The notes under the pieces were generated by a model, which saw nothing but the letters and a program-made list of their open reading frames with translations, did no database searches and was not told the origin of the DNA. Positions 3,041 through 63,595 of a stretch of 64,000 bases of DNA are shown here, piece by piece (the first letter of the stretch is position 1; each line of letters begins with the position of its first letter). Position numbers and translations under genes: made by a program. The stretch covers positions 1 to 64,000 of IMG/VR virus record IMGVR_UViG_3300031963_000004. One strand, 5' to 3'.

Positions 3041-3745
3041 CTAGTTCCGCAACTTAGCGAGTTTGAAAAAGCGTAAAATAGTTAGATATATCCAGCCTAT
3101 ATCTACTTCGTAAGGCTTCTTACTAAGTTTAGGATTTGCTGGATCTAGATGATGATTGTTATGTAGTTCTTCGCCACCGATGATTATGCCCCATGGTGCA
3201 ATGTTTTTACTTTGATCTTTGGTCTCACCGTTACGATAACCCCACCAGTGACCTATACCATTGATTACTCCTGCTGCCCAAAAGGGTATCCACAGCATTT
3301 GTACGCCCCATATTATGGCGCCCATCCAACCAAAGACAATGAGGTTGAACACAAGGAGAATACTAATGCCAAGTCTGCTGTGAGGTGTGTATAACTTACG
3401 CTCAATCCAGTCATTAGGAGTACCGATGCCATAAGTATTAACCATCTCTTTATCTTTGCTTGCGTCATTGTATAATAAAGCTCCCTTAAATAATACATGC
3501 CATATACCGTGTGTGACTGGGCTATGTGGATCACCTTCTAGTTCACAGAATCTATGATGTTTACGATGAACTGCGACCCATTGTTTAGTAACCATACCTG
3601 TTGTTAACCATAACCAAAAACGCATGAAGTGGCTAATGATTGGATTAAACTCTATACCTTTATGTGCTTGACCACGATGTAAGTATAAGGTTACACATAT
3701 GATTGTTATGTGTGTTGTGATTAGTGTATATAAAATTGCTGTCAT
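3041..3745 (-). CDS. Membrane fatty acid (acyl-lipid/acyl-CoA, delta-9 type) desaturase
   Basis: Histidine boxes LHRGQAH, HRKHH and EELHNNHH, NGIGHWWGYRN, and hydrophobic TM segments. Confidence 0.92.
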   Translation of the reverse strand: MTAILYTLITTHITIICVTLYLHRGQAHKGIEFNPIISHFMRFWLWLTTGMVTKQWVAVHRKHHRFCELEGDPHSPVTHGIWHVLFKGALLYNDASKDKEMVNTYGIGTPNDWIERKLYTPHSRLGISILLVFNLIVFGWMGAIIWGVQMLWIPFWAAGVINGIGHWWGYRNGETKDQSKNIAPWGIIIGGEELHNNHHLDPANPKLSKKPYEVDIGWIYLTILRFFKLAKLRN

Positions 3746-3770
3746 AATTGCTCACTTTAACTCTATTTTG

Positions 3771-3837
3771 GGGCACGACTCCCGGAGAGTAGCGCAGCAG
3801 CCGCGCCCTCACGGTCCTAAGGTGAAGTCTTAAGTGC
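3771..3837 (-). ncRNA. Candidate structured cis-regulatory RNA in desaturase leader (family unassigned)
   Basis: 40/60 G+C over 3771-3830 in an AT-rich genome; pairings GCAC..GACUUC/GGAGUC.GUGC, UUCAC/GUGAG, GCGCGG/CUGCGC, ACUC/GAGU. Confidence 0.5.
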
Positions 3838-4006
3838 TTTTGTAACCAGCTATATTTTTTGCTTCTAGTTCTCTTAGGTCATTAGCTACATCACTTACAC
3901 CATGCCAATCTTCAATGGCAATCATAACCTGTAAGTATTCAAGCAATATTTCTTTTTGTGTTTGGAAGTCTGTGTAGTCTTTAATTAGAGTCTTTTTTTG
4001 GCTCAT
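3830..4006 (-). CDS. Small hypothetical protein (58 aa)
   Basis: Manual translation MSQKKTLIKDYTDFQTQKEILLEYLQVMIAIEDWHGVSDVANDLRELEAKNIAGYKST; fills the operon gap; below track cutoff. Confidence 0.7.
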   Translation of the reverse strand: MSQKKTLIKDYTDFQTQKEILLEYLQVMIAIEDWHGVSDVANDLRELEAKNIAGYKST

Positions 4007-4157
4007 CTTTTTTTTCTTCTTTCTTTTGTTCTTGTTGTACTATTGGAGCTGGTTCTTTTTTCTCTGGCATGTATTTGTCAACTGCCCAATTTGCAGTCAT
4101 CCAGCCCATTGCGCTGAAGAAGCCCCACACTATCATATAAGGTATCTCGCCTATCAT
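3981..4157 (-). CDS. Small membrane protein (58 aa)
   Basis: Manual translation MIGEIPYMIVWGFFSAMGWMTANWAVDKYMPEKKEP...; hydrophobic N-terminus, charged tail; ATGA overlap with upstream stop. Confidence 0.7.
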   Translation of the reverse strand: MIGEIPYMIVWGFFSAMGWMTANWAVDKYMPEKKEPAPIVQQEQKKEEKKDEPKKDSN

Positions 4158-4549: not shown

Positions 4550-4615
4550 TTAATGTTCCCCGTATGGGACTACTGGACGATCATCATCTGGGTTTGGGGT
4601 ATTTGGATCTCTCAT
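4550..4615 (-). CDS. Putative 21-aa micro-ORF (MRDPNTPNPDDDRPVVPYGEH)
   Basis: ATG overlaps the dps stop (ATGA) and the ORF fills the gap to the next gene. Confidence 0.4.
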   Translation of the reverse strand: MRDPNTPNPDDDRPVVPYGEH

Positions 4616-5052
4616 GCTCTATCTACTTTAAGAAAACTACGTAACATCCAACCATGTTTACCATGGGCATCGATACGTTCTGCTATGTAGTTTGCGATAG
4701 CTTGATTTTCTTCGTTTGCTAAGGGAAAAATAGCATTTAATAATTCAATAATTTTTAAGTTATCTTCATATAATTCAGCAAGCATTAATTCAGCACGTGG
4801 TATCTTGACCTGATCTTGAATTATACTTAATTCCATAAATCTTGCTAAACTGCCAGGAGTATATTGGTCAAGAACACGAATAAATTCTGCTGTTCTATCG
4901 ATAGAATTTTCAAATACTTCTGTGTTTAACTCATCTAAGAATTTGTGATATTCTGAAAAATTAGGACCCTCGACATTCCAATGGAAGTTATGTGCTTTTA
5001 AATAAAACACAAAACTACTTGCTAATAATATTTTTAACTGTTCTGCTAACAT
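4612..5052 (-). CDS. dps: Dps / ferritin-like DNA protection protein
   Basis: KAHNFHWNVEGPNFSEYHKFLDEL..IDRTAEFIR and terminal HGKHGWMLRS signature. Confidence 0.9.
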   Translation of the reverse strand: MLAEQLKILLASSFVFYLKAHNFHWNVEGPNFSEYHKFLDELNTEVFENSIDRTAEFIRVLDQYTPGSLARFMELSIIQDQVKIPRAELMLAELYEDNLKIIELLNAIFPLANEENQAIANYIAERIDAHGKHGWMLRSFLKVDRA

Positions 5053-5060
5053 AAATCCTC

Positions 5061-6233
5061 TTAGTGTTTCAATAGTAATGTACTCAACACGCCAGGATCT
5101 CTAGCAGTTAAATCTGGTTCGCCAGGAGTAATAATAACATTGTACTTCATCTGTGGATTCTTTCTACCCTTAGTTTCCCATTCATTGTATGTAAGAATAC
5201 TATTTGCACTGATACCATATTCGCCGGCTAATCTTTGTTTTAGTTCAGGGATCTTGTCAGGTATAACCTGCCATTGGCCTTGTGGACCCTTAACAAGATT
5301 TTTCTTTTCATCCTTAACTAACAAATCATAGAATAAGTTTGTTGGAACAATGCGACTATTTTTTGTTTGTGCTAAACTTGGATCCGCTGCTTTAACTTTC
5401 TTTTCTTGTGAAGTATGTGCACCTTCACTCCAGTTAATCATAAAGTTATTTGGCTTCTGACCTAATACAACATCAGCAACTTTAGTATAAGCATAGAACA
5501 GTACATTTGGATTAGATTGTGCTAGATTATACGCTAATTGAATATATTCTGGGCTAAAGAAGTCACCTGAATCATGCCAGCGAATAGTTACATTATATCC
5601 TGCTTTTTGTCCTTTAGCAACCTCTTTTTTAATCTCATTATCTAGTTGATTGAAGAAACCACTTGGATCATTAAGTAAATATGTTAGCATTCTTGCTCTG
5701 CTTAACCAGGCCGCTTCAAATTGTACAAAGCCACCTTTCATAGCAAAGCAATCTACTTTACAACTACCTGCTCCGGGACATGTGTTTACTATAATTAATT
5801 TACCGGTAGATTCATCTAAAGCAATACCAACTAATGCAGCAAAGCCAACATTAAAGAATTGTTCTTCAGCACCATCACTGTGCTTCATCTTTTCATTTTT
5901 CTTTAATATCTTATCTGGTCTTATTGATAAAGCTTGTTTAATATCTTCTTCTCTATAACGTTTACCCGAAGCATCATAGTATTTTACAACACTACTACGG
6001 TGAACATATGGTAACTTATATTTGTCTGTTTTACCTTTTTCTTGACCTGCAATACGACCCATGTAATCTTGAAATTCTTCATCACCAAACTCTCTTGATG
6101 GTGCAGGTAATTTAGTAGCTTCATCTACTTCTTGCTCTCCTGCTTGTGCTACGAACTCCTCAGGGCTCATAATTTGAACACCCGGTAATGCACCAGGCAT
6201 CTCGCTTTCTAATAGTAAGTCTGTAATTTTCAT
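5061..6233 (-). CDS. Phage Gp88-like protein (Cys-cluster, possible Fe-S)
   Basis: TCPGAGSCKVDCFAMKG (Cx5Cx3C), IRWHDSGDFF, FYAYTK; MKITDLLLE leader. Confidence 0.65.
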   Translation of the reverse strand: MKITDLLLESEMPGALPGVQIMSPEEFVAQAGEQEVDEATKLPAPSREFGDEEFQDYMGRIAGQEKGKTDKYKLPYVHRSSVVKYYDASGKRYREEDIKQALSIRPDKILKKNEKMKHSDGAEEQFFNVGFAALVGIALDESTGKLIIVNTCPGAGSCKVDCFAMKGGFVQFEAAWLSRARMLTYLLNDPSGFFNQLDNEIKKEVAKGQKAGYNVTIRWHDSGDFFSPEYIQLAYNLAQSNPNVLFYAYTKVADVVLGQKPNNFMINWSEGAHTSQEKKVKAADPSLAQTKNSRIVPTNLFYDLLVKDEKKNLVKGPQGQWQVIPDKIPELKQRLAGEYGISANSILTYNEWETKGRKNPQMKYNVIITPGEPDLTARDPGVLSTLLLKH

Positions 6234-55253: not shown

Positions 55254-55664
55254 TTATTCGGGCTCAGTTTCATCACCTTCTAAATCAGTATTACCTGTTA
55301 GATCAGTATCAGTACCTGCTTCTTCAACTTGAACAGCATTATCACTTGTGCTTGTGCTGAAGTTCCATGGATAGCTATCGCCACTTACTGTAATCTTTCT
55401 TCCTGCAATTTTAGTGATTTGACCTACTGTACCGTTATCTAACTTTACAGTGATACTCATTTCGCCTGCTGCTAAATCACCAGCTGCTTTAGCAACTAAA
55501 CGACATACTGCTGTGTTGTCACTTGCATCACTGCATAAAAATCTAGCAGCACCCTTTTGTTTTACGATGTAACCAGGTGTGCTTGCTGTACCATTATGAA
55601 ATTGTACTTTCAAATTATCGTCTGCGTTTGCACCGAAAAATCTTTTATTAATTGGGCGTCCCAT
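55254..55664 (-). CDS. Hypothetical protein, probably abundant virion protein (136 aa)
   Basis: Own late motif, strong AAGGAG RBS, structured leader and terminator. Confidence 0.75.
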   Translation of the reverse strand: MGRPINKRFFGANADDNLKVQFHNGTASTPGYIVKQKGAARFLCSDASDNTAVCRLVAKAAGDLAAGEMSITVKLDNGTVGQITKIAGRKITVSGDSYPWNFSTSTSDNAVQVEEAGTDTDLTGNTDLEGDETEPE

Positions 55665-55695
55665 TTGTTTTCTCCTTTATTAAATGGCGTTCTAG

Positions 55696-55753
55696 GCCTA
55701 CGCAGTGGGTAACTGCATAAACTCTCAATTAAGAGTGAACATAACTATTTATC
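55696..55753 (-). promoter_or_regulatory. Late promoter plus two-hairpin 5' leader
   Basis: GATAAATA 55746-55753; hairpins ACUCUU/GAGAGU and an 11-bp GUUUAUGCAGU/ACUGCGUAGGC. Confidence 0.55.
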
Positions 55754-58700
55754 TTATGCACCTAAAGGTCTAGGTGCGCTACTTGTACTTGTACCAGAAG
55801 CGATTCCTGTTCCCATTGTTATCAAATGTTTGTTACCTGTAGCAGAGTTAACAATGTAAACACCAGTTGATCCGCCTACCAGTGTCCAAAAACCAGGACC
55901 AGTTGATCCTCTGTTCTTAATGTTAACATCGTTAACATATAAGTTTCTCCAATAAGCTTCTGCGGTAGAAGTTATAGTGACTGTTAAATCATTAACACCA
56001 TCAGTCCCGCCCAATTGACTACCGTAAATTGTAATAGTGTCATTTGTTACATAACCACTTCCTAAGGAGTGAACTCTGACTTTATAAATTTGATTAGTCA
56101 ATGGTGCTAAGTTTTGATGTGTCCAAACTTCTATCATTGCACCTGTACCAGAACCACTCGTTGTCCCTACAGTACTTGTTGGAGTACCTACTGCTGAACT
56201 ATTATGACGTACATAATAACTAGTTAGAAAATCAATAGTACCTACAGGTGTTCCTGAAATCGTAGTGATGGCACCTACACCTCCGGACGGTCTACCCAAA
56301 CTTTGAGAGTTCGCATCTCCCATTGTAGGCGTTAGATGTCCCACACTGTCTATTTGCATTGTCAAGTATTGTTCGTTAACGAATCCAATACCCATAGCAC
56401 TATCAAATAAGTAAAAACCTGTTCCTGTCTGAGTTTTACCAGTTTGGATAGTAATACCTAACTCATCCGATGAAACATATAGACCTTGCCTTGCACCATG
56501 ATACCCTTCAATGTTTAAAATATCATAGTTTGTAATTTTACCATTAACATCTAATGCGTTTTGACGATTGATTGTTAATCCATTCAATACACCAACACCA
56601 GTAATGTTAGGTTGATTACCATTAGCTTCTAAAATATTTCTAGCAAAGTTTGCTGTATTTGCATTTAGTGACCATGTTGAGTAATTTGCGTTTGGCACTT
56701 CACCTACAACATTAGGTCCTACTAAATGAGTTAAATTAATACCATTTGCTTCAATTAATGTTGTTCTTAATAGTCCTGTTGCTTTGTTGTATGTTAAATT
56801 AGCGTCACCTGCAAATTCGTCAGTGTCATTAAACTGAACATGTGTATCTAATCCACCTGGGGTTACTTCAGGTAACGCTACCCAACCAAGATTACCTGTA
56901 CCATCTGTTTGTAATACGTAATCTGCTGTGCCACCTGGTATTGTAATATTCGCTAATTGAGGTAATGTAATATTACCTTCAATGAATGCATCAGTTTTAC
57001 TTGTGAATGCACCATTAACTTGTAATGATGTTAGATTACCTACACTTGTAATGTTAGGTTGTGCAGCTACTATGACTGTATTTGCTAGATTTGCATTGCC
57101 CGCATTAGCAACAACACCTACAATATTTGCTGCAGGCAAATCTGTTAATCCCTGACCACTGCCATAGAATGCAGTCGCAGTTAATCTACCAGTTGATCTA
57201 TCAAATGTCAAGAATGGACTTGCATCTAATCTATTGTTAGTATTAAATTGAACTTGTGTATTTGATCCACTAGCTGGATCAGGAACGTTCCATGACAATA
57301 CACCTGCACCATTAGTCTTTAATACATAACCATCAGTGCCACCAGTGATAGTTAAGTTAGCTACGGATCCCAAATTAACTTTTTCTGTCGCTGTTAGATT
57401 TGCAGTAGTAACGTTTCCTGTAACAGAAATATTAGCAGCAGAAACATTCGCATCAATTGTGGCTGAACCTGTTAAATCTAAATTAACAGCATATACATTA
57501 GCAACAGCGGTTACATTACCACCTTGTATATTACCTGTAGCTGTTATATTTTCACCAGAGTTTACATTACCAACATTTATATCATCTGCTGTTAGTGTAC
57601 CAGTAGTAATAAAGTTACCACCAGTAATGTTACCAGTAACAATTGTAACACCATTAACTTGTAAGTTACCTAATGTTGCATTGCCCGTTACCGTAGCGTT
57701 ACTTGATACAGTAATATTATTACTTTGTACATTGCCTGTTGTGTTAAAGTTAGCAGCGTTAGCGTTAGCTGAAGCAGTTAATGTAGTTACGCTAGCAGGA
57801 CCTGATGTTATTGATCCTGAAGTTGAGAGATTTCCAACACTTGCATTACCTGTGATTGTTAATCCTTCACCACCTGCAATATTACCGGTAACGTTTAAAT
57901 TGCCCTGACTAGTTAATCTACCTACAGTAGCAGCACCGGATACCGTTAATATGTCTGTGGTATTAATTTCACCACTGGCTGTAATCTTCCCAGAAGAATT
58001 TAGATTTCCTGCTGAGGCGTTACCCGAAACGTTAAGTGTTGTAAGTGTACCTACACCTGTGATATTCGGTTGTGAAGCAGTTGTTAAACTTCCTGCAATT
58101 CTAGTTGCACTTAATGTATTTGATGATCTGTCAAAGGTAAATGAAGACGATCCACTAAAGTTACCATCATCATTAAATTGTACGAACGTGTTGCTGCCAC
58201 CTGGTAATCTTTGTACTACCCAACTTAGATTACCTGTACCATCTGTTTTTAGTACGTAGCCATCAAACCCACCTGATATTTTAATATTTCCTACGCTGCC
58301 TAAATTAGCATTATTGGTAACTGTTAGATTAGCTCCTGAAATATTATTAGAGACAGAAATATTATTACCTGCTGAAATGTTTCCACTTACACTAAATGCA
58401 TCTTCTGTCGAACTCAGTACGGTGTTACCAATATAAATTGTACTATTGGCTAAGTAAATATCTTTCCAACGTTGTGTTGGTGAGCCTAAATCATATGTTA
58501 CGTTTGCACTAGGTAAGAGTGCGCTACCAACAGTACCTAATAATCTTAAATTACCTATGTTAGCATTTTTAGCTACAGTAAGATTTTCTGATACAGAAAC
58601 ATTACCTGTAGCAGCGATGTTACCAGAAGCATTAAGCACGCCTACGTTAGAAATACCACTTACAGTTAATCTACCTGCTGTAGAAATATTAGCTGCTGAT

Positions 58701-61700
58701 AGATTACCAGATGCTATAATTTGGTCTGTGACGTTTATGTTACCTATATCTGCGTTTGCTGTTACAGTTAAGTTTGCGGCAGTAGTAATATTACCTGTAG
58801 CTGATACAACACCAGTAGATACAACATTACCTGCGTTAACTGTTACAGTTACATTGGCATTACCTGTTACTCTTAGATTAGCAGTGTTAGCGTTACCTGT
58901 AACATTTAAAATTCCTGCAGTTGAAATATTACCTGCTGTGAGATTGCCTGTTGATGTAATTATACCGCTTACGGATAAATTACCAGCAGATGCGTTACCA
59001 GCTACAACCAATGTATTGTTACTTGTAATTGATTGACCTGTAATACTATCGGTTGCTAGAACTCTTGTAGTTCCTATATTTCCAACATTAGCATTACCTG
59101 TAACATTAAGTGTAGTATTACTTACAATTGATTGACCTGTAATACTATCGGTTGCTAGAACTCTTGTAGTTCCTATATTGCCAACGTTAGCATTACCTGT
59201 AACAGTTAGTGCATTGTTTACACTTATATTACCAGCAGTAATATTTCCTGTTACCGTTGATGTAGTTACGTTTGATGAAGTACCTACTAAATTACCTAAT
59301 AGAGTACTAGCTCTTACGTTACCTAAACTATTAAAAGTTACAACTTCATTGGTTACTGAGACATTACTACCAAAACTAAATTCTGCGTTACTATCGTCCC
59401 AACCCATAAATGCATCGACAGGGCTTCCGGCATTGTAATAATGTAGTAAACTACCCCTGTCTTTGTTGTCATCAGAGGTTAATGGGCTACCGTCTGCATT
59501 TCCACCTTGTTCAATGATTGGATCTTTGATTCTCATTGTTGTTACATTTGAGAATAAAGTTTGTCCATTAACTGTTAGGTTTCCTGATATAGTAACATTG
59601 GCAACAGCACTTAAATTACCATTGATGACAGTGTTGTTAAGTGTTGAATCGCCGCCTACATACAATGTTCCATTTGTAGATATATTACCTGCTTGCAAAT
59701 TACGATTAACTGTTGCATCAGCATTGATTTGAGCACCATTAGCAACAATTCTTCCTGAGTTGGCGAATATTTCACCGGTTGATTCAATCAAACTTGCTCT
59801 ACTTGTACCCGAAGTGATTATATTCGCAGTCGATTCAATATTACCCAATACAGTAAACTTACGGTTTAAAGTAAGATTACCGTCTACTTGTACATCTTGT
59901 AAAAAAGATTTTTGAGAAACAGTTAAGTTTCCACCTACTTCTGCATTTGCTGTTACAAGTAATCTATTCGTTGTATGTAAACTGTTTACGGTTACATCAG
60001 TAGCAGTTAAACTGATAGTTTGAATGTTGTTAAATGCTCTTAGATTACCTACGTTAGCATTGGCTGTTATAGCTAATGATGCACCTACGATATTACCCAC
60101 TGCTGTTATTTGGCCTGCACTGCGTAAATTACCAACGTTAGCGTTGCTTGTAACGTCTAAGAAACCAGAACTCATTAAATTAGCAGCAGAAACAAAACCT
60201 GCTACTGTAGTATTAGCTAAATTAGCGTTACCACTTACTCTCAACATTCCGCCAATGTTAGCTTGATTGTTTGTTTGTAAGTTATCAAACAATCCTCTAT
60301 TACCAACTGAAAGATTAGTATTTGCTGTTATATTGTTTGCTACAATATTTTTACTAATAGCAACGTTGTTAGAAATATCAATATCGAATGCTGTTAATTT
60401 TTGAGCAGCAGTTATATTACCTGTAGCAGAAATTTCTCTGGCATTTATATCTCTAGAGGTAATATCTCCTGAAGTAATAACATTACCGCCTACTAAATCA
60501 TTAGTAGAAACAATTCTATTTGCTATAATGTTTCCAGAATTAGCATAGATATGAGTATTTGATACAATCATACCTGCTATTAGGTTACCTGTTATATCTG
60601 CTCTACCATCTGTAACTAAGTTAGCACCAGTTACATTACCAGTGGCAATTATTGATTGAGCATTCACATTAGAAAGTATCGAATCACCTAATACTTCTAA
60701 TTTTTCATTTGCTTTTAAATTAGCACCAATTACATTACCACTAGCACTAACCATACCACCCGTAAGTATGTTAGCGCCTGTTATGTTTCCGATAGACAGT
60801 ATCGTGCTTGATGCTCTTAAATTGCCTACATTCGCATTACCTAATACAGTAAGTACATTGGAAGTTTTATCAAAAGTTAAAGCATTGCTTCCGTTAGCCA
60901 AGCCTGCATCACTAAACACTATTGATTTATCGGTACCAGGTAAACTAATGTTACCAGAGATATTTCCACGTAAATTACCGATAAATGTGGAGGCTGTAAC
61001 GTTACCGGTTACATTAATATTACCTACACCTATATTACTTGCAACAGTTAAGCCACCAGTTACACTGACATTAGAAACATTTAAGTTTCCACCTGCTATT
61101 ATATTGCCTGTTGTGTTTAAATTACCTACATTTGCATTCGCACCAACAGTTAATCTGTTAGTGATAGTCACGTTATTACCTGAAACGTTACCTACTGCAA
61201 CAATTTGACCTGTGGTATTTAAATTACCTGATGTGAGATTGCCAGTTGAGACAATAGCGCCGTTAGATGTAACGTTGCCTGCTGTTATATTGCCAATTAC
61301 ACCTATTGTAGAATTAGCAGTTATGTTTGTTGCTACAAGATTACTTGCTACAGACATATTAGCCGTAGCAGAAATGTTTGCTCCTGATATATCCCCGGCA
61401 GTTGCGATTCCAGTATTTGCAATAATACTACCAGCTGTTAACATTCCGGTTACATTTAACTGTCCACTAGCATTAATGCTGTCAGCAGACATATTTCCAC
61501 TTGCAATTACATTACCGTTAGATGATAATGAATTTACAGTAACATTACCTGTTACTGCTAAGCTTATTAGATTACCAACACTTGTAATATTTGGTTGTGC
61601 ATTAGTTAATACAGTACCAGAGAATGTAGCACGGTTAGCGTTAGCGACTGTTCCGGTAACATTGGCACCCGTTATGCTTGCTAAATTAGCACCATTGCCT

Positions 61701-63595
61701 GTAAAGCTTACGGCAGTTATACTGTCTACGTTACCTATGTTACCTGCTCTGAGATTACCTGTAAAATTAGCCGATCCAAATGTAGAAATATTGCCTGTTA
61801 AGGTGGCATTTACAAAACTAGCATTACCGTTTACAGACAATCCTGTTAATTCACCGACACTTGTAATATTAGGTTGTGCATTTGTATATACAGTGCCTGA
61901 TACCAGTGAATTAGACACTTGTCCTGTTATATTTGCACCAGTAATAGAACTTAATCTAGAACCATTACCACTAAAAGTACCTGTAACTACACCGGTATCT
62001 TTATCAAAAATAATTGCGCTTGAACCACCTAAATCGCCATTGTCGTTAAATTGTATACTATTAACTGGTCCGCTTGGTAACGTTTTAACAATTTGAGTTG
62101 GTTCCCATGCAACTGTACCATTGCCTCTTGTTGTTAAAACAAAGTTAGGGCTACCGCCTGTTAATGTTAAATTAGCTGCACTACCTAAATTAACTGGACC
62201 TTCAACTGTTAAACTACTTAGATTACCTAAATTAGTAATGTTGGGCTGATTACTATCAGTTAATGATCCTGATAAACTAGCTGCATTAACAGAGGTAACA
62301 CTTAAATTATTTGCATTGAAGCTACTACCACTAAATGACAAACCTGTTGGTGTAGCAGAAATTGTTTGCTCACCTAAATATATTGTATTACCTGATAGGT
62401 ATATATCTTTCCAACGTTGTGTAGGTGATCCTAAATCATAGGCTATATCTACATTAGGTACAAGCGGTGATCTTACATTGCCTGTTAATGTTAAATCTCT
62501 AGCAGTAACTCTACCATCCGCAGAAATATTATTAATAGATAAATTGTTTGCATCAATATTACCATTAGTATCAATACTTCCGCCTATATTTAAATTACCT
62601 GCAATATTAGCTGAAGTTGTTGCAGTAATACTTGTAAATGCACCTGAGTTAGGGCTAATAGCACCAATACGACCAATGAAGGTATTGCTTGCTTGTACTG
62701 TATTACCTATTACTCTTTGTGTTGATGTAATATTGCCACCAACTTGAAGTTGGTTAGTAATTCTATTGAATGTTAAGTTCGCAGATGATACGAATATACC
62801 AGCACCATCTGTAATTTGAATTTGATTGTTTGCACCTGCTGATGTACCTGCACCTGCTGTAAAGAATGAAACTGTTGCAGTACCAGTATAAGGTGTTATA
62901 TTACCTAAACTAGGAGAGCTAAAATCTACTTGATCGGCAACGACATCAAACTTGTCTGTTCTAAATAGTTCAAATGTTGTTTCATCAATAACTTTAGCGT
63001 AATACTTGCTGGTTCCTCTTTCACCTGACGTAGCGATTGCATTTAGAATATTAGCATCACCCTCTACACCAACAATAGTTAGTGGTACACCAGTTACAAT
63101 AGAACTAGCCTTAGTTAATGTTACAACAGCAGGGTTAGTTTTACTAATTCCTGCAATTTCATAAGATAAAACACCACTGTTTACAAACTGAAGGTTACCT
63201 TGTCCATCTGTCTGTAGTGCATATCCATTAACACCACCATAAATTTTAACATTTTCTATCTTACCCAAATCAACTACAGTATTTGAAGTAGGACCACCCG
63301 CATTTACCCAAGCTCCGTCCTGTACAGCCAATACCTGACCTTCTTGGACATTATCAATATTGAGCGTTGTGTTGGCAGAACCATCAACTTTAGCAAAGTT
63401 GAGTGTACTAACCTCTGTTAAAATTTCGGTTTGTGTTGTTGTATTACCGTCAGCAGGAGGGTGTAATAAAGGATCGTTCCCTATATACAGTTTTCGTTCG
63501 TCAGTTGCGAACCCTACTTCGCCTTCGGCTAATTGGGGCAGGTCTACGTTAGCCCCTGTACGGTGTTGAATCTTAGATACTTGTATGATTGCCAT
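55754..63595 (-). CDS. Giant tail fibre / filament protein (2613 aa)
   Basis: IQHRTG..LPQLAEGEVGFATDERKLYIGND start; FCCH-like ISKTNPAVVT; long Asn/Gly/Thr/Val repeats; QPNITSVG and YDLGSPTQRWKDIYL repeats. Confidence 0.8.
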   Translation of the reverse strand: MAIIQVSKIQHRTGANVDLPQLAEGEVGFATDERKLYIGNDPLLHPPADGNTTTQTEILTEVSTLNFAKVDGSANTTLNIDNVQEGQVLAVQDGAWVNAGGPTSNTVVDLGKIENVKIYGGVNGYALQTDGQGNLQFVNSGVLSYEIAGISKTNPAVVTLTKASSIVTGVPLTIVGVEGDANILNAIATSGERGTSKYYAKVIDETTFELFRTDKFDVVADQVDFSSPSLGNITPYTGTATVSFFTAGAGTSAGANNQIQITDGAGIFVSSANLTFNRITNQLQVGGNITSTQRVIGNTVQASNTFIGRIGAISPNSGAFTSITATTSANIAGNLNIGGSIDTNGNIDANNLSINNISADGRVTARDLTLTGNVRSPLVPNVDIAYDLGSPTQRWKDIYLSGNTIYLGEQTISATPTGLSFSGSSFNANNLSVTSVNAASLSGSLTDSNQPNITNLGNLSSLTVEGPVNLGSAANLTLTGGSPNFVLTTRGNGTVAWEPTQIVKTLPSGPVNSIQFNDNGDLGGSSAIIFDKDTGVVTGTFSGNGSRLSSITGANITGQVSNSLVSGTVYTNAQPNITSVGELTGLSVNGNASFVNATLTGNISTFGSANFTGNLRAGNIGNVDSITAVSFTGNGANLASITGANVTGTVANANRATFSGTVLTNAQPNITSVGNLISLAVTGNVTVNSLSSNGNVIASGNMSADSINASGQLNVTGMLTAGSIIANTGIATAGDISGANISATANMSVASNLVATNITANSTIGVIGNITAGNVTSNGAIVSTGNLTSGNLNTTGQIVAVGNVSGNNVTITNRLTVGANANVGNLNTTGNIIAGGNLNVSNVSVTGGLTVASNIGVGNINVTGNVTASTFIGNLRGNISGNISLPGTDKSIVFSDAGLANGSNALTFDKTSNVLTVLGNANVGNLRASSTILSIGNITGANILTGGMVSASGNVIGANLKANEKLEVLGDSILSNVNAQSIIATGNVTGANLVTDGRADITGNLIAGMIVSNTHIYANSGNIIANRIVSTNDLVGGNVITSGDITSRDINAREISATGNITAAQKLTAFDIDISNNVAISKNIVANNITANTNLSVGNRGLFDNLQTNNQANIGGMLRVSGNANLANTTVAGFVSAANLMSSGFLDVTSNANVGNLRSAGQITAVGNIVGASLAITANANVGNLRAFNNIQTISLTATDVTVNSLHTTNRLLVTANAEVGGNLTVSQKSFLQDVQVDGNLTLNRKFTVLGNIESTANIITSGTSRASLIESTGEIFANSGRIVANGAQINADATVNRNLQAGNISTNGTLYVGGDSTLNNTVINGNLSAVANVTISGNLTVNGQTLFSNVTTMRIKDPIIEQGGNADGSPLTSDDNKDRGSLLHYYNAGSPVDAFMGWDDSNAEFSFGSNVSVTNEVVTFNSLGNVRASTLLGNLVGTSSNVTTSTVTGNITAGNISVNNALTVTGNANVGNIGTTRVLATDSITGQSIVSNTTLNVTGNANVGNIGTTRVLATDSITGQSITSNNTLVVAGNASAGNLSVSGIITSTGNLTAGNISTAGILNVTGNANTANLRVTGNANVTVTVNAGNVVSTGVVSATGNITTAANLTVTANADIGNINVTDQIIASGNLSAANISTAGRLTVSGISNVGVLNASGNIAATGNVSVSENLTVAKNANIGNLRLLGTVGSALLPSANVTYDLGSPTQRWKDIYLANSTIYIGNTVLSSTEDAFSVSGNISAGNNISVSNNISGANLTVTNNANLGSVGNIKISGGFDGYVLKTDGTGNLSWVVQRLPGGSNTFVQFNDDGNFSGSSSFTFDRSSNTLSATRIAGSLTTASQPNITGVGTLTTLNVSGNASAGNLNSSGKITASGEINTTDILTVSGAATVGRLTSQGNLNVTGNIAGGEGLTITGNASVGNLSTSGSITSGPASVTTLTASANANAANFNTTGNVQSNNITVSSNATVTGNATLGNLQVNGVTIVTGNITGGNFITTGTLTADDINVGNVNSGENITATGNIQGGNVTAVANVYAVNLDLTGSATIDANVSAANISVTGNVTTANLTATEKVNLGSVANLTITGGTDGYVLKTNGAGVLSWNVPDPASGSNTQVQFNTNNRLDASPFLTFDRSTGRLTATAFYGSGQGLTDLPAANIVGVVANAGNANLANTVIVAAQPNITSVGNLTSLQVNGAFTSKTDAFIEGNITLPQLANITIPGGTADYVLQTDGTGNLGWVALPEVTPGGLDTHVQFNDTDEFAGDANLTYNKATGLLRTTLIEANGINLTHLVGPNVVGEVPNANYSTWSLNANTANFARNILEANGNQPNITGVGVLNGLTINRQNALDVNGKITNYDILNIEGYHGARQGLYVSSDELGITIQTGKTQTGTGFYLFDSAMGIGFVNEQYLTMQIDSVGHLTPTMGDANSQSLGRPSGGVGAITTISGTPVGTIDFLTSYYVRHNSSAVGTPTSTVGTTSGSGTGAMIEVWTHQNLAPLTNQIYKVRVHSLGSGYVTNDTITIYGSQLGGTDGVNDLTVTITSTAEAYWRNLYVNDVNIKNRGSTGPGFWTLVGGSTGVYIVNSATGNKHLITMGTGIASGTSTSSAPRPLGA
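59028..59203. repeat. Two near-identical 99-bp-period tandem units in giant fibre
   Basis: attgattgacctgtaatactatc... at 59028 and 59127; encodes VTGNANVGNIGTTRVLATDSITGQSI x2. Confidence 0.85.

What the first reader, a model, noticed from the sequence alone, without database searches (positions are those of the whole stretch)
3751..3837. GC-rich structured RNA candidate in front of the desaturase, with switch-like alternative pairing
Seen on the minus strand: GCACUUAAGACUUCACCUUAGGACCGUGAGGGCGCGGCUGCUGCGCUACUCUCCGGGAGUCGUGCCCC; 67% GC over 3771-3830 in an AT-rich genome. It offers a closing stem GCAC..GACUUC/GGAGUC.GUGC, hairpins UUCAC/GUGAG, GCGCGG/CUGCGC and ACUC/GAGU, and an alternative GGGCGC/GUGCCC helix. 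GUGAG occurs twice, inside the element and 10 nt before the desaturase AUG, so UUCAC could alternatively pair with the ribosome-binding region. I cannot match it to a riboswitch or ribozyme I know. Inference: a new cis-regulatory motif (thermosensor or ligand sensor) controlling host membrane fluidity, or a small ncRNA.
Basis: partly seen in the sequence, partly recalled or inferred. Interest (0 to 1): 0.7.

Follow-up and report, generated by a model that had tools for sequence, protein, structure and literature searches.

The report
Phage RNA antisense to 23S rRNA
The GC-rich stretch is a real, previously undescribed structured RNA carried once per genome by many freshwater giant phages; it is not a desaturase switch, and its conserved loops are complementary to a universally conserved part of the large ribosomal RNA.

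Summary
The element (window 3750-3829, minus strand) is real. It belongs to a large RNA family found in more than 300 IMG/VR and metagenome contigs. It is absent from Rfam 15, from 50,697 GenBank phage records and, apart from 2 MAG contigs, from 185,579 prokaryote genomes.

Two independent 99-sequence alignments support four helices: 91-92% of cells are paired and the covariation score is 0.54, against at most 0.12 for slid controls. The closing stem, the ACUC/GAGU hairpin, the GGGCGC/GUGCCC helix and the RBS switch are not conserved.

It is not desaturase-specific. Only 18 of 80 desaturase loci carry it, and in about half of those it lies downstream of the gene. All six large phage records checked hold exactly one copy. 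It starts at or around the stop codon of varied upstream genes.

Its invariant loops are antisense to 23S rRNA helices 69-71 (E. coli 1902-1978). The 5' loop matches 1910-1933 at 22 of 24 positions, with 0 of 600 shuffles as good. At least three P4-loop classes each match a different stretch of 1930-1979.

Best reading (confidence about 0.4): a phage RNA that base-pairs with 23S domain IV. No transcript or binding data exist.

The parts
3830..3832 (-). UAA stop of the upstream 58-aa ORF (3830..4006), 2 nt before P1
   Evidence: In the family the upstream ORF stops just before P1 in 60 of 99 elements. It stops at the UAG inside the invariant CCUUAGG in 25 of 99.
3822..3827 (-). P1 5' strand, CUUCAC
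   Evidence: Pairs with 3807-3812. All 7 model pairs of P1 show double changes. Coordinates checked.
3813..3821 (-). Block A, CUUAGGACC. It is the apical loop of P1 and nearly invariant in the family.
   Evidence: With its flanks (ACCUUAGGACCGU) it is exactly antisense to E. coli 23S 1919-1931. The duplex is -23.1 kcal/mol against -15.2 +/- 1.9 for shuffled blocks.
3807..3812 (-). P1 3' strand, GUGAGG
3803..3806 (-). P2 5' strand, GCGC
   Evidence: Three of the four P2 pairs covary; 99.5-99.7% of cells are paired.
3796..3802 (-). Block B, the P2 loop GGCUGCU. With its closing C-G pair it forms the invariant CGGCUGCUG.
   Evidence: Invariant in 98 of 99 sequences. Antisense to 16S 519-527, extending to 11 of 11 with flanks. 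It can also pair with 23S 1902-1910 (9 bp including 2 G.U, -18 kcal/mol).
3792..3795 (-). P2 3' strand, GCGC
3786..3790 (-). P3 5' strand, ACUCU
   Evidence: Pairs with 3760-3764. All 10 model pairs of P3 show double changes.
3781..3783 (-). P4 5' strand, GGG
   Evidence: Pairs with 3770-3772. All three pairs covary in the metagenome set.
3773..3780 (-). Block C, the P4 apical loop AGUCGUGC (the window's loop class)
   Evidence: 7 of 8 antisense to 23S 1964-1971; the variant AUUCGUGC is exact. Other loop classes are antisense to 23S 1930-1938 and 1967-1979. On its own this class is not significant.
3770..3772 (-). P4 3' strand, CCC
3760..3764 (-). P3 3' strand, AGAGU
3750..3757 (-). Invariant single-stranded 3' tail, AAGUGAGC.
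   Evidence: Present in 96 of 99 sequences. No significant rRNA complement. Its partner is unknown.
3041..3745 (-). Fatty-acid desaturase gene. Its ATG lies 4 nt after the tail and it has no canonical SD. It is a neighbour, not part of the element.
   Evidence: PF00487 at E = 2.6e-15. Genes that start within 30 nt of the tail are SD-poor: 4% against 33% for background ORFs.

Best explanation
The element is a single-copy, autonomous structured RNA module of a clade of freshwater jumbo phages. It is 80-105 nt long and about 80 nt long here.

**Shown**
- It has three hairpin domains (P1, P2 and P3/P4) and an invariant 3' tail.
- It is transcribed in the sense of the flanking genes, directly after or overlapping the stop codon of whatever ORF lies upstream.
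- Its conserved unpaired blocks sit in loops. They are antisense to the universally conserved H69-H71 region of 23S rRNA domain IV.

**Inferred**
- The RNA works by base-pairing through these loops with 23S rRNA, either nascent or in free 50S subunits. This would sequester or remodel the H69-H71 face of the subunit interface.
- It would therefore act on host ribosome assembly, subunit joining or recycling, not on the desaturase specifically.

**In the window**
- It is an intercistronic element between a 58-aa ORF and the SD-less desaturase gene.
- Any effect on the desaturase would be through translation of the junction. It would not be through sensing temperature or a ligand.
For: **A real RNA on this strand**
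- 92.0% and 90.7% of cells are paired in two independent 99-sequence sets.
- 24 of 27 pairs show double changes.
- The covariation score is 0.54, against 0.04-0.12 for slid controls, and 0 of 500 shuffles reach it.
- G.U pairs number 134 against 33 A.C pairs.

**Autonomous**
- All six phage records of 144-354 kb hold exactly one copy.
- The neighbours on both sides vary.
- Blocks A-C have no complementary site elsewhere in the 223-kb genome.
- It is phage-specific.

**Complementarity to rRNA, checked on real E. coli rrnH**
- Every element has 12-15 nt exactly antisense to 23S 1919-1933.
- Long-type elements match 1910-1933 at 22 of 24 positions. Their local score is 36, against a shuffle mean of 20, sd 2.2 and maximum 30 (0 of 600). 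The sense orientation scores at background level.
- GUUAC, antisense to 1910-1914, occurs in 71 of 93 distinct long-type 5' domains.
- When block C was left free in the search, the P4 loops fell into classes that each match a different stretch of the same region:
  - AUUCGCUAC matches 1930-1937 (about 62 distinct sequences with covarying stems).
  - AUUCGUGC / AGUCGUGC matches 1964-1971.
  - UACGCCAG and the CGCCAUUC-containing loops match 1967-1979.
- The best antisense match of the 3' domain lies in 23S 1900-1999 in 68 of 201 sequences, against 4 of 201 shuffled.
- Block B can pair with 1902-1910, which adjoins the target of block A.
- The few substitutions in block A are mostly wobble-compatible: A to G opposite U1923, and C to U opposite G1929.

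**Feasibility and context**
- A synthetic PNA against H69 blocks translation (Kulik 2017, as cited in PMC12828698).
- These phages carry other translation-related genes: a tmRNA in G000 and bS21 in 2 of 5 relatives.
Against: - There is no transcript or end-mapping evidence; the metatranscriptome contigs do not cover the element.
- No binding data exist.
- The host is unknown, and the rRNA comparison used E. coli. That the matched sites are universally conserved rests on general knowledge (the I-CeuI site and the 519R primer site).
- The window's own P4 loop class is only 7 of 8 complementary and is not significant alone (p = 0.42).
- The invariant tail has no rRNA match.
- Block B's best match is to the 16S 530 loop rather than to 23S, and it is only marginal (p about 0.05).
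- In mature 50S subunits, positions 1925-1933 and H70 are structured and partly buried, so pairing would need nascent or remodelled rRNA.
- Five phage genomes encode no RNase III, no RluA-type pseudouridine synthase and no L7Ae.
- The complementarity was found after the fact, so some forking-path inflation is likely.
- A relic of captured antisense rDNA cannot be excluded.
Confidence: 0.4

Rival explanations
1. It is a cis-acting device for translation at gene junctions. The ribosome terminates at the stop codon that abuts or lies inside the element. It is then retained, possibly through rRNA pairing as with the TURBS of eukaryotic viruses, or delivered by the compact fold. It re-initiates on the SD-less gene that starts 4-24 nt after the tail, which in the window is the desaturase.
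For: - The upstream ORF stops just before P1 in 60 of 99 elements, and exactly at the UAG inside the invariant CCUUAGG in 25 of 99.
- 45 of 99 elements are followed within 30 nt by an ORF.
- Only 4% of those ORFs have an SD of -4.5 kcal/mol or stronger, against 33% of background ORFs and 81% of genes 60-90 nt away (Mann-Whitney p = 0.009).
- The window has no promoter or terminator around the element.
Against: - There is only one copy per 144-354 kb genome, although these genomes have hundreds of gene junctions.
- In about half the loci the element is followed by a sigma-70-like promoter plus a strong SD, or by a strong intrinsic terminator, before the next gene.
- Tight spacing on both sides is expected anyway in compact phage genomes.
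- The complementarity is mainly to 23S rRNA, not to the small-subunit rRNA.
Confidence: 0.2
2. It is a structured RNA whose invariant loops bind a protein or a small ligand, or form its own tertiary core. The 23S-antisense blocks would be an evolutionary relic or a coincidence, for example an exapted antisense rDNA fragment, and would have no role in pairing with rRNA.
For: - Variable, covarying helices that frame invariant unpaired blocks are also typical of aptamers and protein-binding RNAs.
- The tail and the main P4 loop class have no significant rRNA complement.
- GGA motifs sit in the loops (UAGGAC, GGGAGU, and CGGAAU in the long type). This recalls CsrA-type sponges, by sequence inspection only.
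- The target region is partly buried in mature ribosomes.
Against: - At least three different P4 loop classes each complement a different stretch of the same 80-nt rRNA region. This points to continuing selection for complementarity rather than to a decaying relic.
- P1 base pairs adjoining block A (CUA) and the unpaired GUUAC stay fixed while other pairs covary.
- The neighbouring genes are too varied for a metabolite riboswitch.
- A promoter often separates the element from the next gene.
Confidence: 0.25
3. One reading: a riboswitch or RNA thermometer in the desaturase leader that switches by alternative pairing of UUCAC with the GUGAG near the start codon.
For: - In the window the tail GUGAG lies 5 nt upstream of the desaturase AUG and could serve as a weak SD (-4.1 kcal/mol).
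- The window subtype has a more stable alternative fold: -28.0 against -18.2 kcal/mol for the family structure.
Against: - Only 18 of 80 desaturase loci have the element, and in about half of those it lies downstream of the gene.
- P1 covaries (ACACC/GGUGU, AUCAUC/GAUGAU, CAACG/CGUUG) while the tail stays fixed, so the proposed switch is not conserved.
- The alternative helices are specific to this subtype.
- The tail-to-AUG distance ranges from 4 nt to more than 700 nt.
Confidence: 0.03
4. It is a 3'-end element: a self-cleaving ribozyme, an RNase processing site, or a structure that blocks exonucleases and stabilises the upstream message or releases a 3'-UTR-derived sRNA.
For: - It always lies at the 3' end of an ORF.
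- In several loci a strong terminator follows within about 10 nt, or a weak hairpin with a U-run that overlaps the next promoter.
Against: - It matches no known ribozyme family even at E <= 10.
- Plain stabilisers do not need four invariant loop blocks.
- In 45% of loci an ORF follows directly with no terminator.
Confidence: 0.08

Closest known systems
snoRNA-type rRNA-binding RNAs of archaea and eukaryotes (C/D and H/ACA guides; the U3/U8 pre-rRNA chaperones)
   Same: A small structured RNA whose conserved unpaired segments are complementary to highly conserved rRNA. Different family members carry different guide segments in the same scaffold position.
   Different: - It has no C/D or H/ACA boxes.
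- Five of these phage genomes encode no L7Ae and no RluA-type pseudouridine synthase.
- It is encoded by bacteriophages, and no such RNA is known in bacteria or phages.
- Several loops aim at one rRNA region.
Kissing-loop antisense RNAs of plasmids and phages (RNAI/RNAII, CopA/CopT, and oop and similar RNAs)
   Same: Complementary sequences are displayed in hairpin loops, and there are several loops per RNA.
   Different: - Those RNAs are cis-encoded opposite their mRNA target.
- Here the apparent target is host rRNA encoded elsewhere.
- No complementary site exists in the phage genome.
TURBS (termination upstream ribosomal binding site) of caliciviruses and influenza B
   Same: A structured viral mRNA element at a stop/start junction, with a loop complementary to rRNA, next to a downstream cistron that lacks its own initiation signal.
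   Different: - TURBS pairs with 18S rRNA helix 26 and lies upstream of the stop codon.
- This element pairs mainly with 23S rRNA, lies downstream of the stop, occurs once per genome, and is often followed by a promoter or terminator.
Synthetic anti-H69 peptide nucleic acids (Kulik et al. 2017, cited in PMC12828698)
   Same: The same target helix of 23S rRNA. They show that antisense binding there can block translation.
   Different: They are artificial oligomers, whereas this would be a natural RNA with additional loops.
Orphan phage and environmental RNA motifs in Rfam (for example freshwater-2, RF02980, present in this same window)
   Same: A covariation-supported motif from freshwater phage metagenomes, with unknown function.
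   Different: The sequence and structure differ. freshwater-2 hits only window 55662-55736, and no Rfam model matches this element.

Membership tests
Any Rfam 15 family (4227 models, including the known riboswitches, ribozymes and phage motifs) | A covariance-model score at or above the family's gathering threshold | tested here: not met
   No gathering hit at the element in the window or in 13 related loci. In E-value mode only chance hits appear, at E of 2.6 to 7.3.
Riboswitch (generic) | A constant position in the 5' leader of functionally related genes | tested here: not met
   The downstream genes are unrelated. In about 45% of loci a promoter or terminator lies between the element and the next gene. 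The element lies downstream of the desaturase as often as upstream.
Riboswitch (generic) | A conserved expression platform with alternative pairing to the aptamer | tested here: not met
   The proposed UUCAC/GUGAG and GGGCGC/GUGCCC alternatives do not covary and exist only in the window subtype.
Riboswitch (generic) | Specific ligand binding | not testable with these tools
   This needs in-line probing or ITC.
RNA thermometer (ROSE or fourU type) | The SD or AUG is sequestered in a conserved, weakly paired hairpin | tested here: not met
   The tail and the AU-rich spacer are unpaired in the consensus structure. The outer helix of the window MFE, which uses the tail, is not conserved.
Trans-acting antisense RNA (kissing-loop type) | Loop-displayed complementarity to a defined target, above chance | tested here: met
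   - Blocks A and C are antisense to 23S 1910-1979.
- 0 of 600 shuffles reach the observed score.
- The best match falls in 23S 1900-1999 in 68 of 201 sequences, against 4 of 201 shuffled.
- The sense-orientation control is at background.
Trans-acting antisense RNA (kissing-loop type) | A discrete transcript, and physical pairing with the target in vivo | not testable with these tools
   The metatranscriptome contigs did not cover the element.
C/D box or H/ACA guide RNA | Box motifs (RUGAUGA/CUGA, or ANANNA/ACA) and the partner proteins L7Ae, fibrillarin or Cbf5 | tested here: not met
   The consensus has no such boxes. No L7Ae or PseudoU_synth_2 was found in five phage genomes. Fibrillarin was not searched.
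TURBS-like termination-reinitiation element | Complementarity to small-subunit rRNA, a position just upstream of an overlapping or adjacent stop/start, and dependence of the downstream cistron on it | tested here: inconclusive
   Adjacency to the stop codon and SD-poor downstream genes are observed. However, the main complementarity is to 23S rRNA, there is only one copy per genome, and half the loci have no adjacent cistron.
Self-cleaving ribozymes (hammerhead, twister, twister-sister, pistol, hatchet, HDV-like) | A match to the class's conserved core and architecture | tested here: not met
   No Rfam hit even at E <= 10. No CUGANGA/GAAA core is present, by inspection.
CsrB/RsmZ-type CsrA sponge | Many GGA motifs in hairpin loops, and binding to CsrA | tested here: inconclusive
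   There are two or three GGA motifs (UAGGAC, GGGAGU and the CGGAAU bulge). The invariant blocks extend well beyond GGA, and the P2 loop has none. Binding cannot be tested here.
PeSL cassettes of T4-type phages (stem-loop plus early promoter) | A simple stem-loop directly before an early promoter, repeated many times in hyperplastic regions | tested here: not met
   It is single-copy, has a complex four-helix fold, and has a promoter after it in only about 45% of loci.

The most novel reading that the evidence does not exclude
The RNA is a natural, modular guide that docks on the H69-H71 interface of the large ribosomal subunit. Block A anchors on H69, and the P4 loop is exchanged between phage lineages to address either strand of H70. 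Because translation of the upstream ORF ends at or inside the element, it would capture the 50S subunit, or the whole ribosome, at the moment of termination or recycling. It would then either hand the ribosome to the SD-less downstream cistron or mark 23S rRNA for remodelling by a phage factor. This would be a prokaryotic counterpart of both TURBS and snoRNA-like rRNA targeting, and the first natural RNA in bacteria or their viruses known to act by pairing with large-subunit rRNA.
Probability: 0.12. Interest if true: 0.95.

Novelty: categorically new. Interest (0 to 1): 0.85.

Why it matters
**If the pairing is real**
- This would be the first natural RNA of bacteria or phages that targets ribosomal RNA by antisense pairing.
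- Its target would be H69-H71. That region forms intersubunit bridges B2a and B3 and contacts A- and P-site tRNAs, release factors and RRF.
- It would open a new way in which giant phages take over or disable host ribosomes, alongside phage tmRNA and bS21.
- It would also give a natural template for anti-ribosomal antisense agents.

**If the pairing is not real**
- The family is still a large, strongly covarying, phage-specific RNA class that is missing from Rfam and from cultured phages. Its function needs explaining.

**For the original finding**
- The desaturase is an incidental neighbour.
- There is no evidence for a membrane-fluidity sensor.

Tried and rejected
- **Single-sequence folding.** The MFE z-score is -0.9 and so uninformative. 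The MFE fold uses a subtype-specific 10-bp helix.
- **RNAalifold on the raw MAFFT alignment.** It recovered only P2 and part of P4, because indels misalign P1 and P3. A hand-specified structure and realignment with Infernal replaced it.
- **Rfam.** Gathering and E-value modes were run on the window and on relatives, with no hit.
- **tRNA, tmRNA or attP-like origin.** No tRNA is present in the window.
- **GenBank phages.** blastn gave no hit.
- **Transcript evidence.** Four metatranscriptome runs were laid on the window, and none covers the element.
- **Literature.** The invariant strings, and topic searches for phage RNA antisense to rRNA or H69, found no precedent.
- **A target inside the phage genome.** None was found.
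- **Derivation of the whole element from antisense 23S 1800-1950.** The global alignment gives z of only 0.6-4.3, driven by block A.
- **The match of the window's P1 5' strand to 16S 1488-1500 (12 of 13).** It is subtype-specific and at chance level, so it was dropped.
- **A snoRNP-like or RNase III partner.** None is encoded in five phage genomes.
- **The 86-aa DsbA-like neighbour as an obligatory partner.** It is absent from the 223 kb of G000.

Full report
**1. What is at the coordinates**

On the minus strand, window 3829-3750 lies between two genes. Upstream is the UAA stop (3832-3830) of a 58-aa ORF. Downstream is the ATG (3745) of a 234-aa fatty-acid desaturase (PF00487, E = 2.6e-15). 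The quoted sequence is correct.

Its best 60-mer is 68% GC, against a window mean of 36%. That ties it for the highest in the window, and the other GC-rich stretches were not followed up. Folding the single sequence says nothing: -28.5 kcal/mol, z = -0.9. No promoter-like or terminator-like site flanks it in the window.

**2. It is a member of a large family**

- A 26-nt core has 28 exact matches in IMG/VR.
- Only 2 contigs match among one genome each of 185,579 prokaryote species. Both are MAG contigs that are probably phage.
- None of 50,697 GenBank phage records matches.
- Runs holding the window's phage are freshwater or lake metagenomes.
- Rfam 15 has no matching family. The freshwater-2 hit in the same window is a different motif.
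- No paper in the library holds the invariant strings or describes such an RNA.

**3. Structure**

I built a covariance model from 48 long-type sequences with a hand-specified structure. It finds exactly one match in every element-bearing locus.

| Measure | Viral set (A3) | Metagenome set (A4) |
|---|---|---|
| Cells paired | 92.0% | 90.7% |
| Pairs with changes on both sides | 24 of 27 | 24 of 27 |
| Covariation score | 0.539 | 0.543 |
| Same score, slid controls | 0.04-0.10 | 0.04-0.12 |
| Shuffles reaching the score | 0 of 500 | 0 of 500 |

The two sets are independent, with 99 sequences each. G.U pairs (134) far outnumber A.C pairs (33), so the RNA is the gene-sense strand.

The architecture is as follows.
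- P1 encloses the near-invariant CCUUAGGAC. Long-type members add a small hairpin, P1a, and an unpaired GUUAC.
- P2 has the invariant loop CGGCUGCUG.
- P3 encloses P4, whose apical loop is conserved within classes.
- An invariant single-stranded tail, AAGUGAGC, follows.

The window coordinates of every part were checked. The window is a short-type member without P1a.

The closing stem, the ACUC/GAGU hairpin, the GGGCGC/GUGCCC helix and the UUCAC-RBS switch do not covary. They exist only in this subtype.

**4. Genomic behaviour**

- In 80 loci fetched only by desaturase homology, 18 have the element. It lies upstream of the gene in about 7 and directly downstream in about 10.
- In 80 loci fetched by an 86-aa protein with a weak DsbA match (PF11126, E = 5e-4), 59 have the element.
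  - Most of these elements end about 60 nt before that gene.
  - A sigma-70-like promoter (TTGCxx-N17-TATAAT) and an AGGAGA SD lie in between.
- Other neighbours are BPL_N/GATase-like, SNase, radical-SAM, Asn-synthase-like, isocitrate-lyase-like and aminotransferase genes.
- All six phage records of 144-354 kb hold exactly one copy. One of these records is 98% complete.
- The upstream ORF ends just before P1 in 60 of 99 elements. It ends exactly at the UAG inside CCUUAGG in 25 of 99.
- 45 of 99 elements are followed within 30 nt by an ORF, and these ORFs are strikingly SD-poor.
  - Only 4% have an SD of -4.5 kcal/mol or stronger.
  - The figure is 33% for background ORFs and 81% for genes that have their own promoter.
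- Several loci instead have a strong intrinsic terminator about 10 nt after the tail.

The element is therefore an autonomous single-copy module placed at the 3' end of an ORF. It is not a leader of any particular gene.

**5. The unexpected property**

The comparison used real E. coli rrnH.

- *Block A.*
  - Block A with its flanks is exactly antisense to 23S 1919-1931/33 in every member, over 12-15 nt.
  - In long-type members the match runs over 1910-1933 at 22 of 24 positions. That stretch is the loop and 3' strand of helix 69 plus the junction to helix 70.
- *Significance.*
  - The local score is 36. Shuffles give a mean of 20, sd 2.2 and maximum 30, so 0 of 600 reach it.
  - The sense orientation scores at background.
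  - The block A duplex is -23.1 kcal/mol, against -15.2 +/- 1.9 for shuffled blocks.
- *GUUAC.* It is antisense to 1910-1914 and occurs in 71 of 93 distinct long-type 5' domains.
- *P4 loops.* The metagenome search left the P4 loop free, and the loops fell into classes.
  - AUUCGCUAC occurs in about 62 distinct sequences with covarying stems. It is antisense to 1930-1937, and the variant UUUCGCUAC is exact over 9 nt.
  - AGUCGUGC, the window's class, is 7 of 8 antisense to 1964-1971. The variant AUUCGUGC is exact.
  - UACGCCAG and the CGCCAUUC-containing loops are antisense to 1967-1979, with 7-9 nt exact.
- *Where the matches fall.* The best antisense match of the 3' domain lies in 23S 1900-1999 in 68 of 201 distinct sequences, against 4 of 201 shuffled.
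- *Block B.*
  - It is exactly antisense to the 16S 530 loop (519-527, marginal at p about 0.05).
  - It can alternatively pair with 23S 1902-1910 through 9 bp including two G.U pairs. That site adjoins block A's target.
- *No support.*
  - The tail and the window's own P4 class have no significant rRNA complement on their own.
  - A match of the window's P1 strand to 16S 1488-1500 is subtype-specific and at chance level.
  - Alignment of the whole element to antisense 23S is not significant beyond block A.
  - The phage genome holds no complementary site for blocks A-C.

**6. Interpretation**

Shown:
- It is a real, new, phage-specific, single-copy structured RNA.
- It is not specific to the desaturase.
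- Its conserved loops are complementary to 23S domain IV (H69-H71).

Inferred, with confidence of about 0.4: it acts by pairing with 23S rRNA, either nascent or in free 50S subunits. Three points favour this.
- Different loop classes address different stretches of the same 80-nt region. This argues for continuing selection for complementarity rather than for a decaying relic.
- A synthetic PNA against H69 blocks translation (Kulik 2017, via PMC12828698).
- These phages carry other ribosome-related genes: a tmRNA in G000 and bS21 in two relatives.

Against it:
- There are no transcript or binding data.
- The target is partly buried in mature 50S subunits.
- No RNase III, RluA-type pseudouridine synthase or L7Ae is encoded.
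- The tail is unexplained.
- The complementarity was noticed after the fact.

The main rivals are these.
- A cis-acting termination-reinitiation device (0.2). Stop-codon adjacency and SD-poor downstream genes support it. Single-copy status and the many loci with an intervening promoter or terminator count against it.
- A protein- or ligand-binding RNA in which the rRNA likeness is a relic (0.25).
- A 3'-end processing or stability element (0.08).

**7. For the window**

The element is intercistronic. The tail's GUGAG lies 5 nt before the desaturase AUG and may act as a weak SD (-4.1 kcal/mol). That is a local accident of where the module sits.

**8. Verdict**

The cis-regulatory interpretation is wrong in its specifics. 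The family has no counterpart among described RNA classes.

Noticed in passing
window 55662-55736 (minus strand): A freshwater-2 RNA (RF02980, 62.9 bits against a gathering score of 49.9). It lies between the stop of the 2613-aa ORF (55754..63595) and the next gene, whose AAAGGAGA SD and ATG sit at about 55664. It is a different motif from the element studied.
   Followed up: partly
G000 contig 116069-116461 (minus strand; outside the window): ARAGORN calls a permuted (two-piece) tmRNA with the tag ANAANDEVFALAA. The FALAA ending resembles proteobacterial tags and may hint at the host.
   Followed up: no
G001:C1:232992-233144 and G002:C1:35424-35582 (related jumbo phages that carry the element): Homologues of ribosomal protein bS21 (PF01165, E = 1e-14 to 9e-17). 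Two of the five element-bearing genomes searched have one. None was found in the 223 kb of G000.
   Followed up: no
Loci L131, L004, L150, L192, L136, L196, L126, L193, L166 and L202, directly 5' of the element: A conserved micro-ORF of about 25 aa (M-N-x-N-E/D-Y-P-V-Y-P-E-D-D-G-Y-D...N-P-Y/F-S-P-V). It ends at the element, and in L004 it ends at the UAG inside CCUUAGG. Its function is unknown.
   Followed up: no
Family-wide; in the window, the junction at 3743-3757: Genes that start 4-24 nt after the invariant tail have AU-rich spacers and almost never a Shine-Dalgarno sequence: 4%, against 33% for background ORFs and 81% for nearby genes with their own promoter.
   Followed up: partly
Loci L081-L106, L230-L309 and others, 12-18 nt after the element: A well-conserved sigma-70-like promoter (TTGC[A/T][A/T]-N17-TATAAT) and an AGGAGA SD drive an 86-aa gene with a weak match to T4 DsbA (PF11126, E = 5e-4). 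No homologue was found in the 223 kb of G000.
   Followed up: partly
window 3981-4157 (minus strand): A 58-aa ORF whose N-terminus (MIGE...WGFFSAMGWMTANWAVDK) is homologous to the small, probably membrane protein that directly precedes the element in many relatives. In the window a further 58-aa ORF (3830-4006) is inserted between the two.
   Followed up: partly
window 4612-5052 and 5061-6233 (minus strand): A ferritin-like gene (PF00210, E = 5e-19) and a protein with a GP88 domain (PF17338) lie just upstream of the small-ORF cluster. This region looks rich in auxiliary genes.
   Followed up: no
L228 (CAZHPL010000057.1, Lishizhenia MAG) and L229 (NZ_JBBAKG010000001.1, Haliscomenobacter MAG, 183-kb contig): These are the only two prokaryote-genome contigs that hold the element. 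They are probably jumbo-phage contigs binned into Bacteroidota MAGs. The phages' sigma-70-like promoters and strong SDs argue against a Bacteroidota host.
   Followed up: no
window 3041-3745 and IMG/VR: The phage desaturase is very widespread.
   Followed up: no
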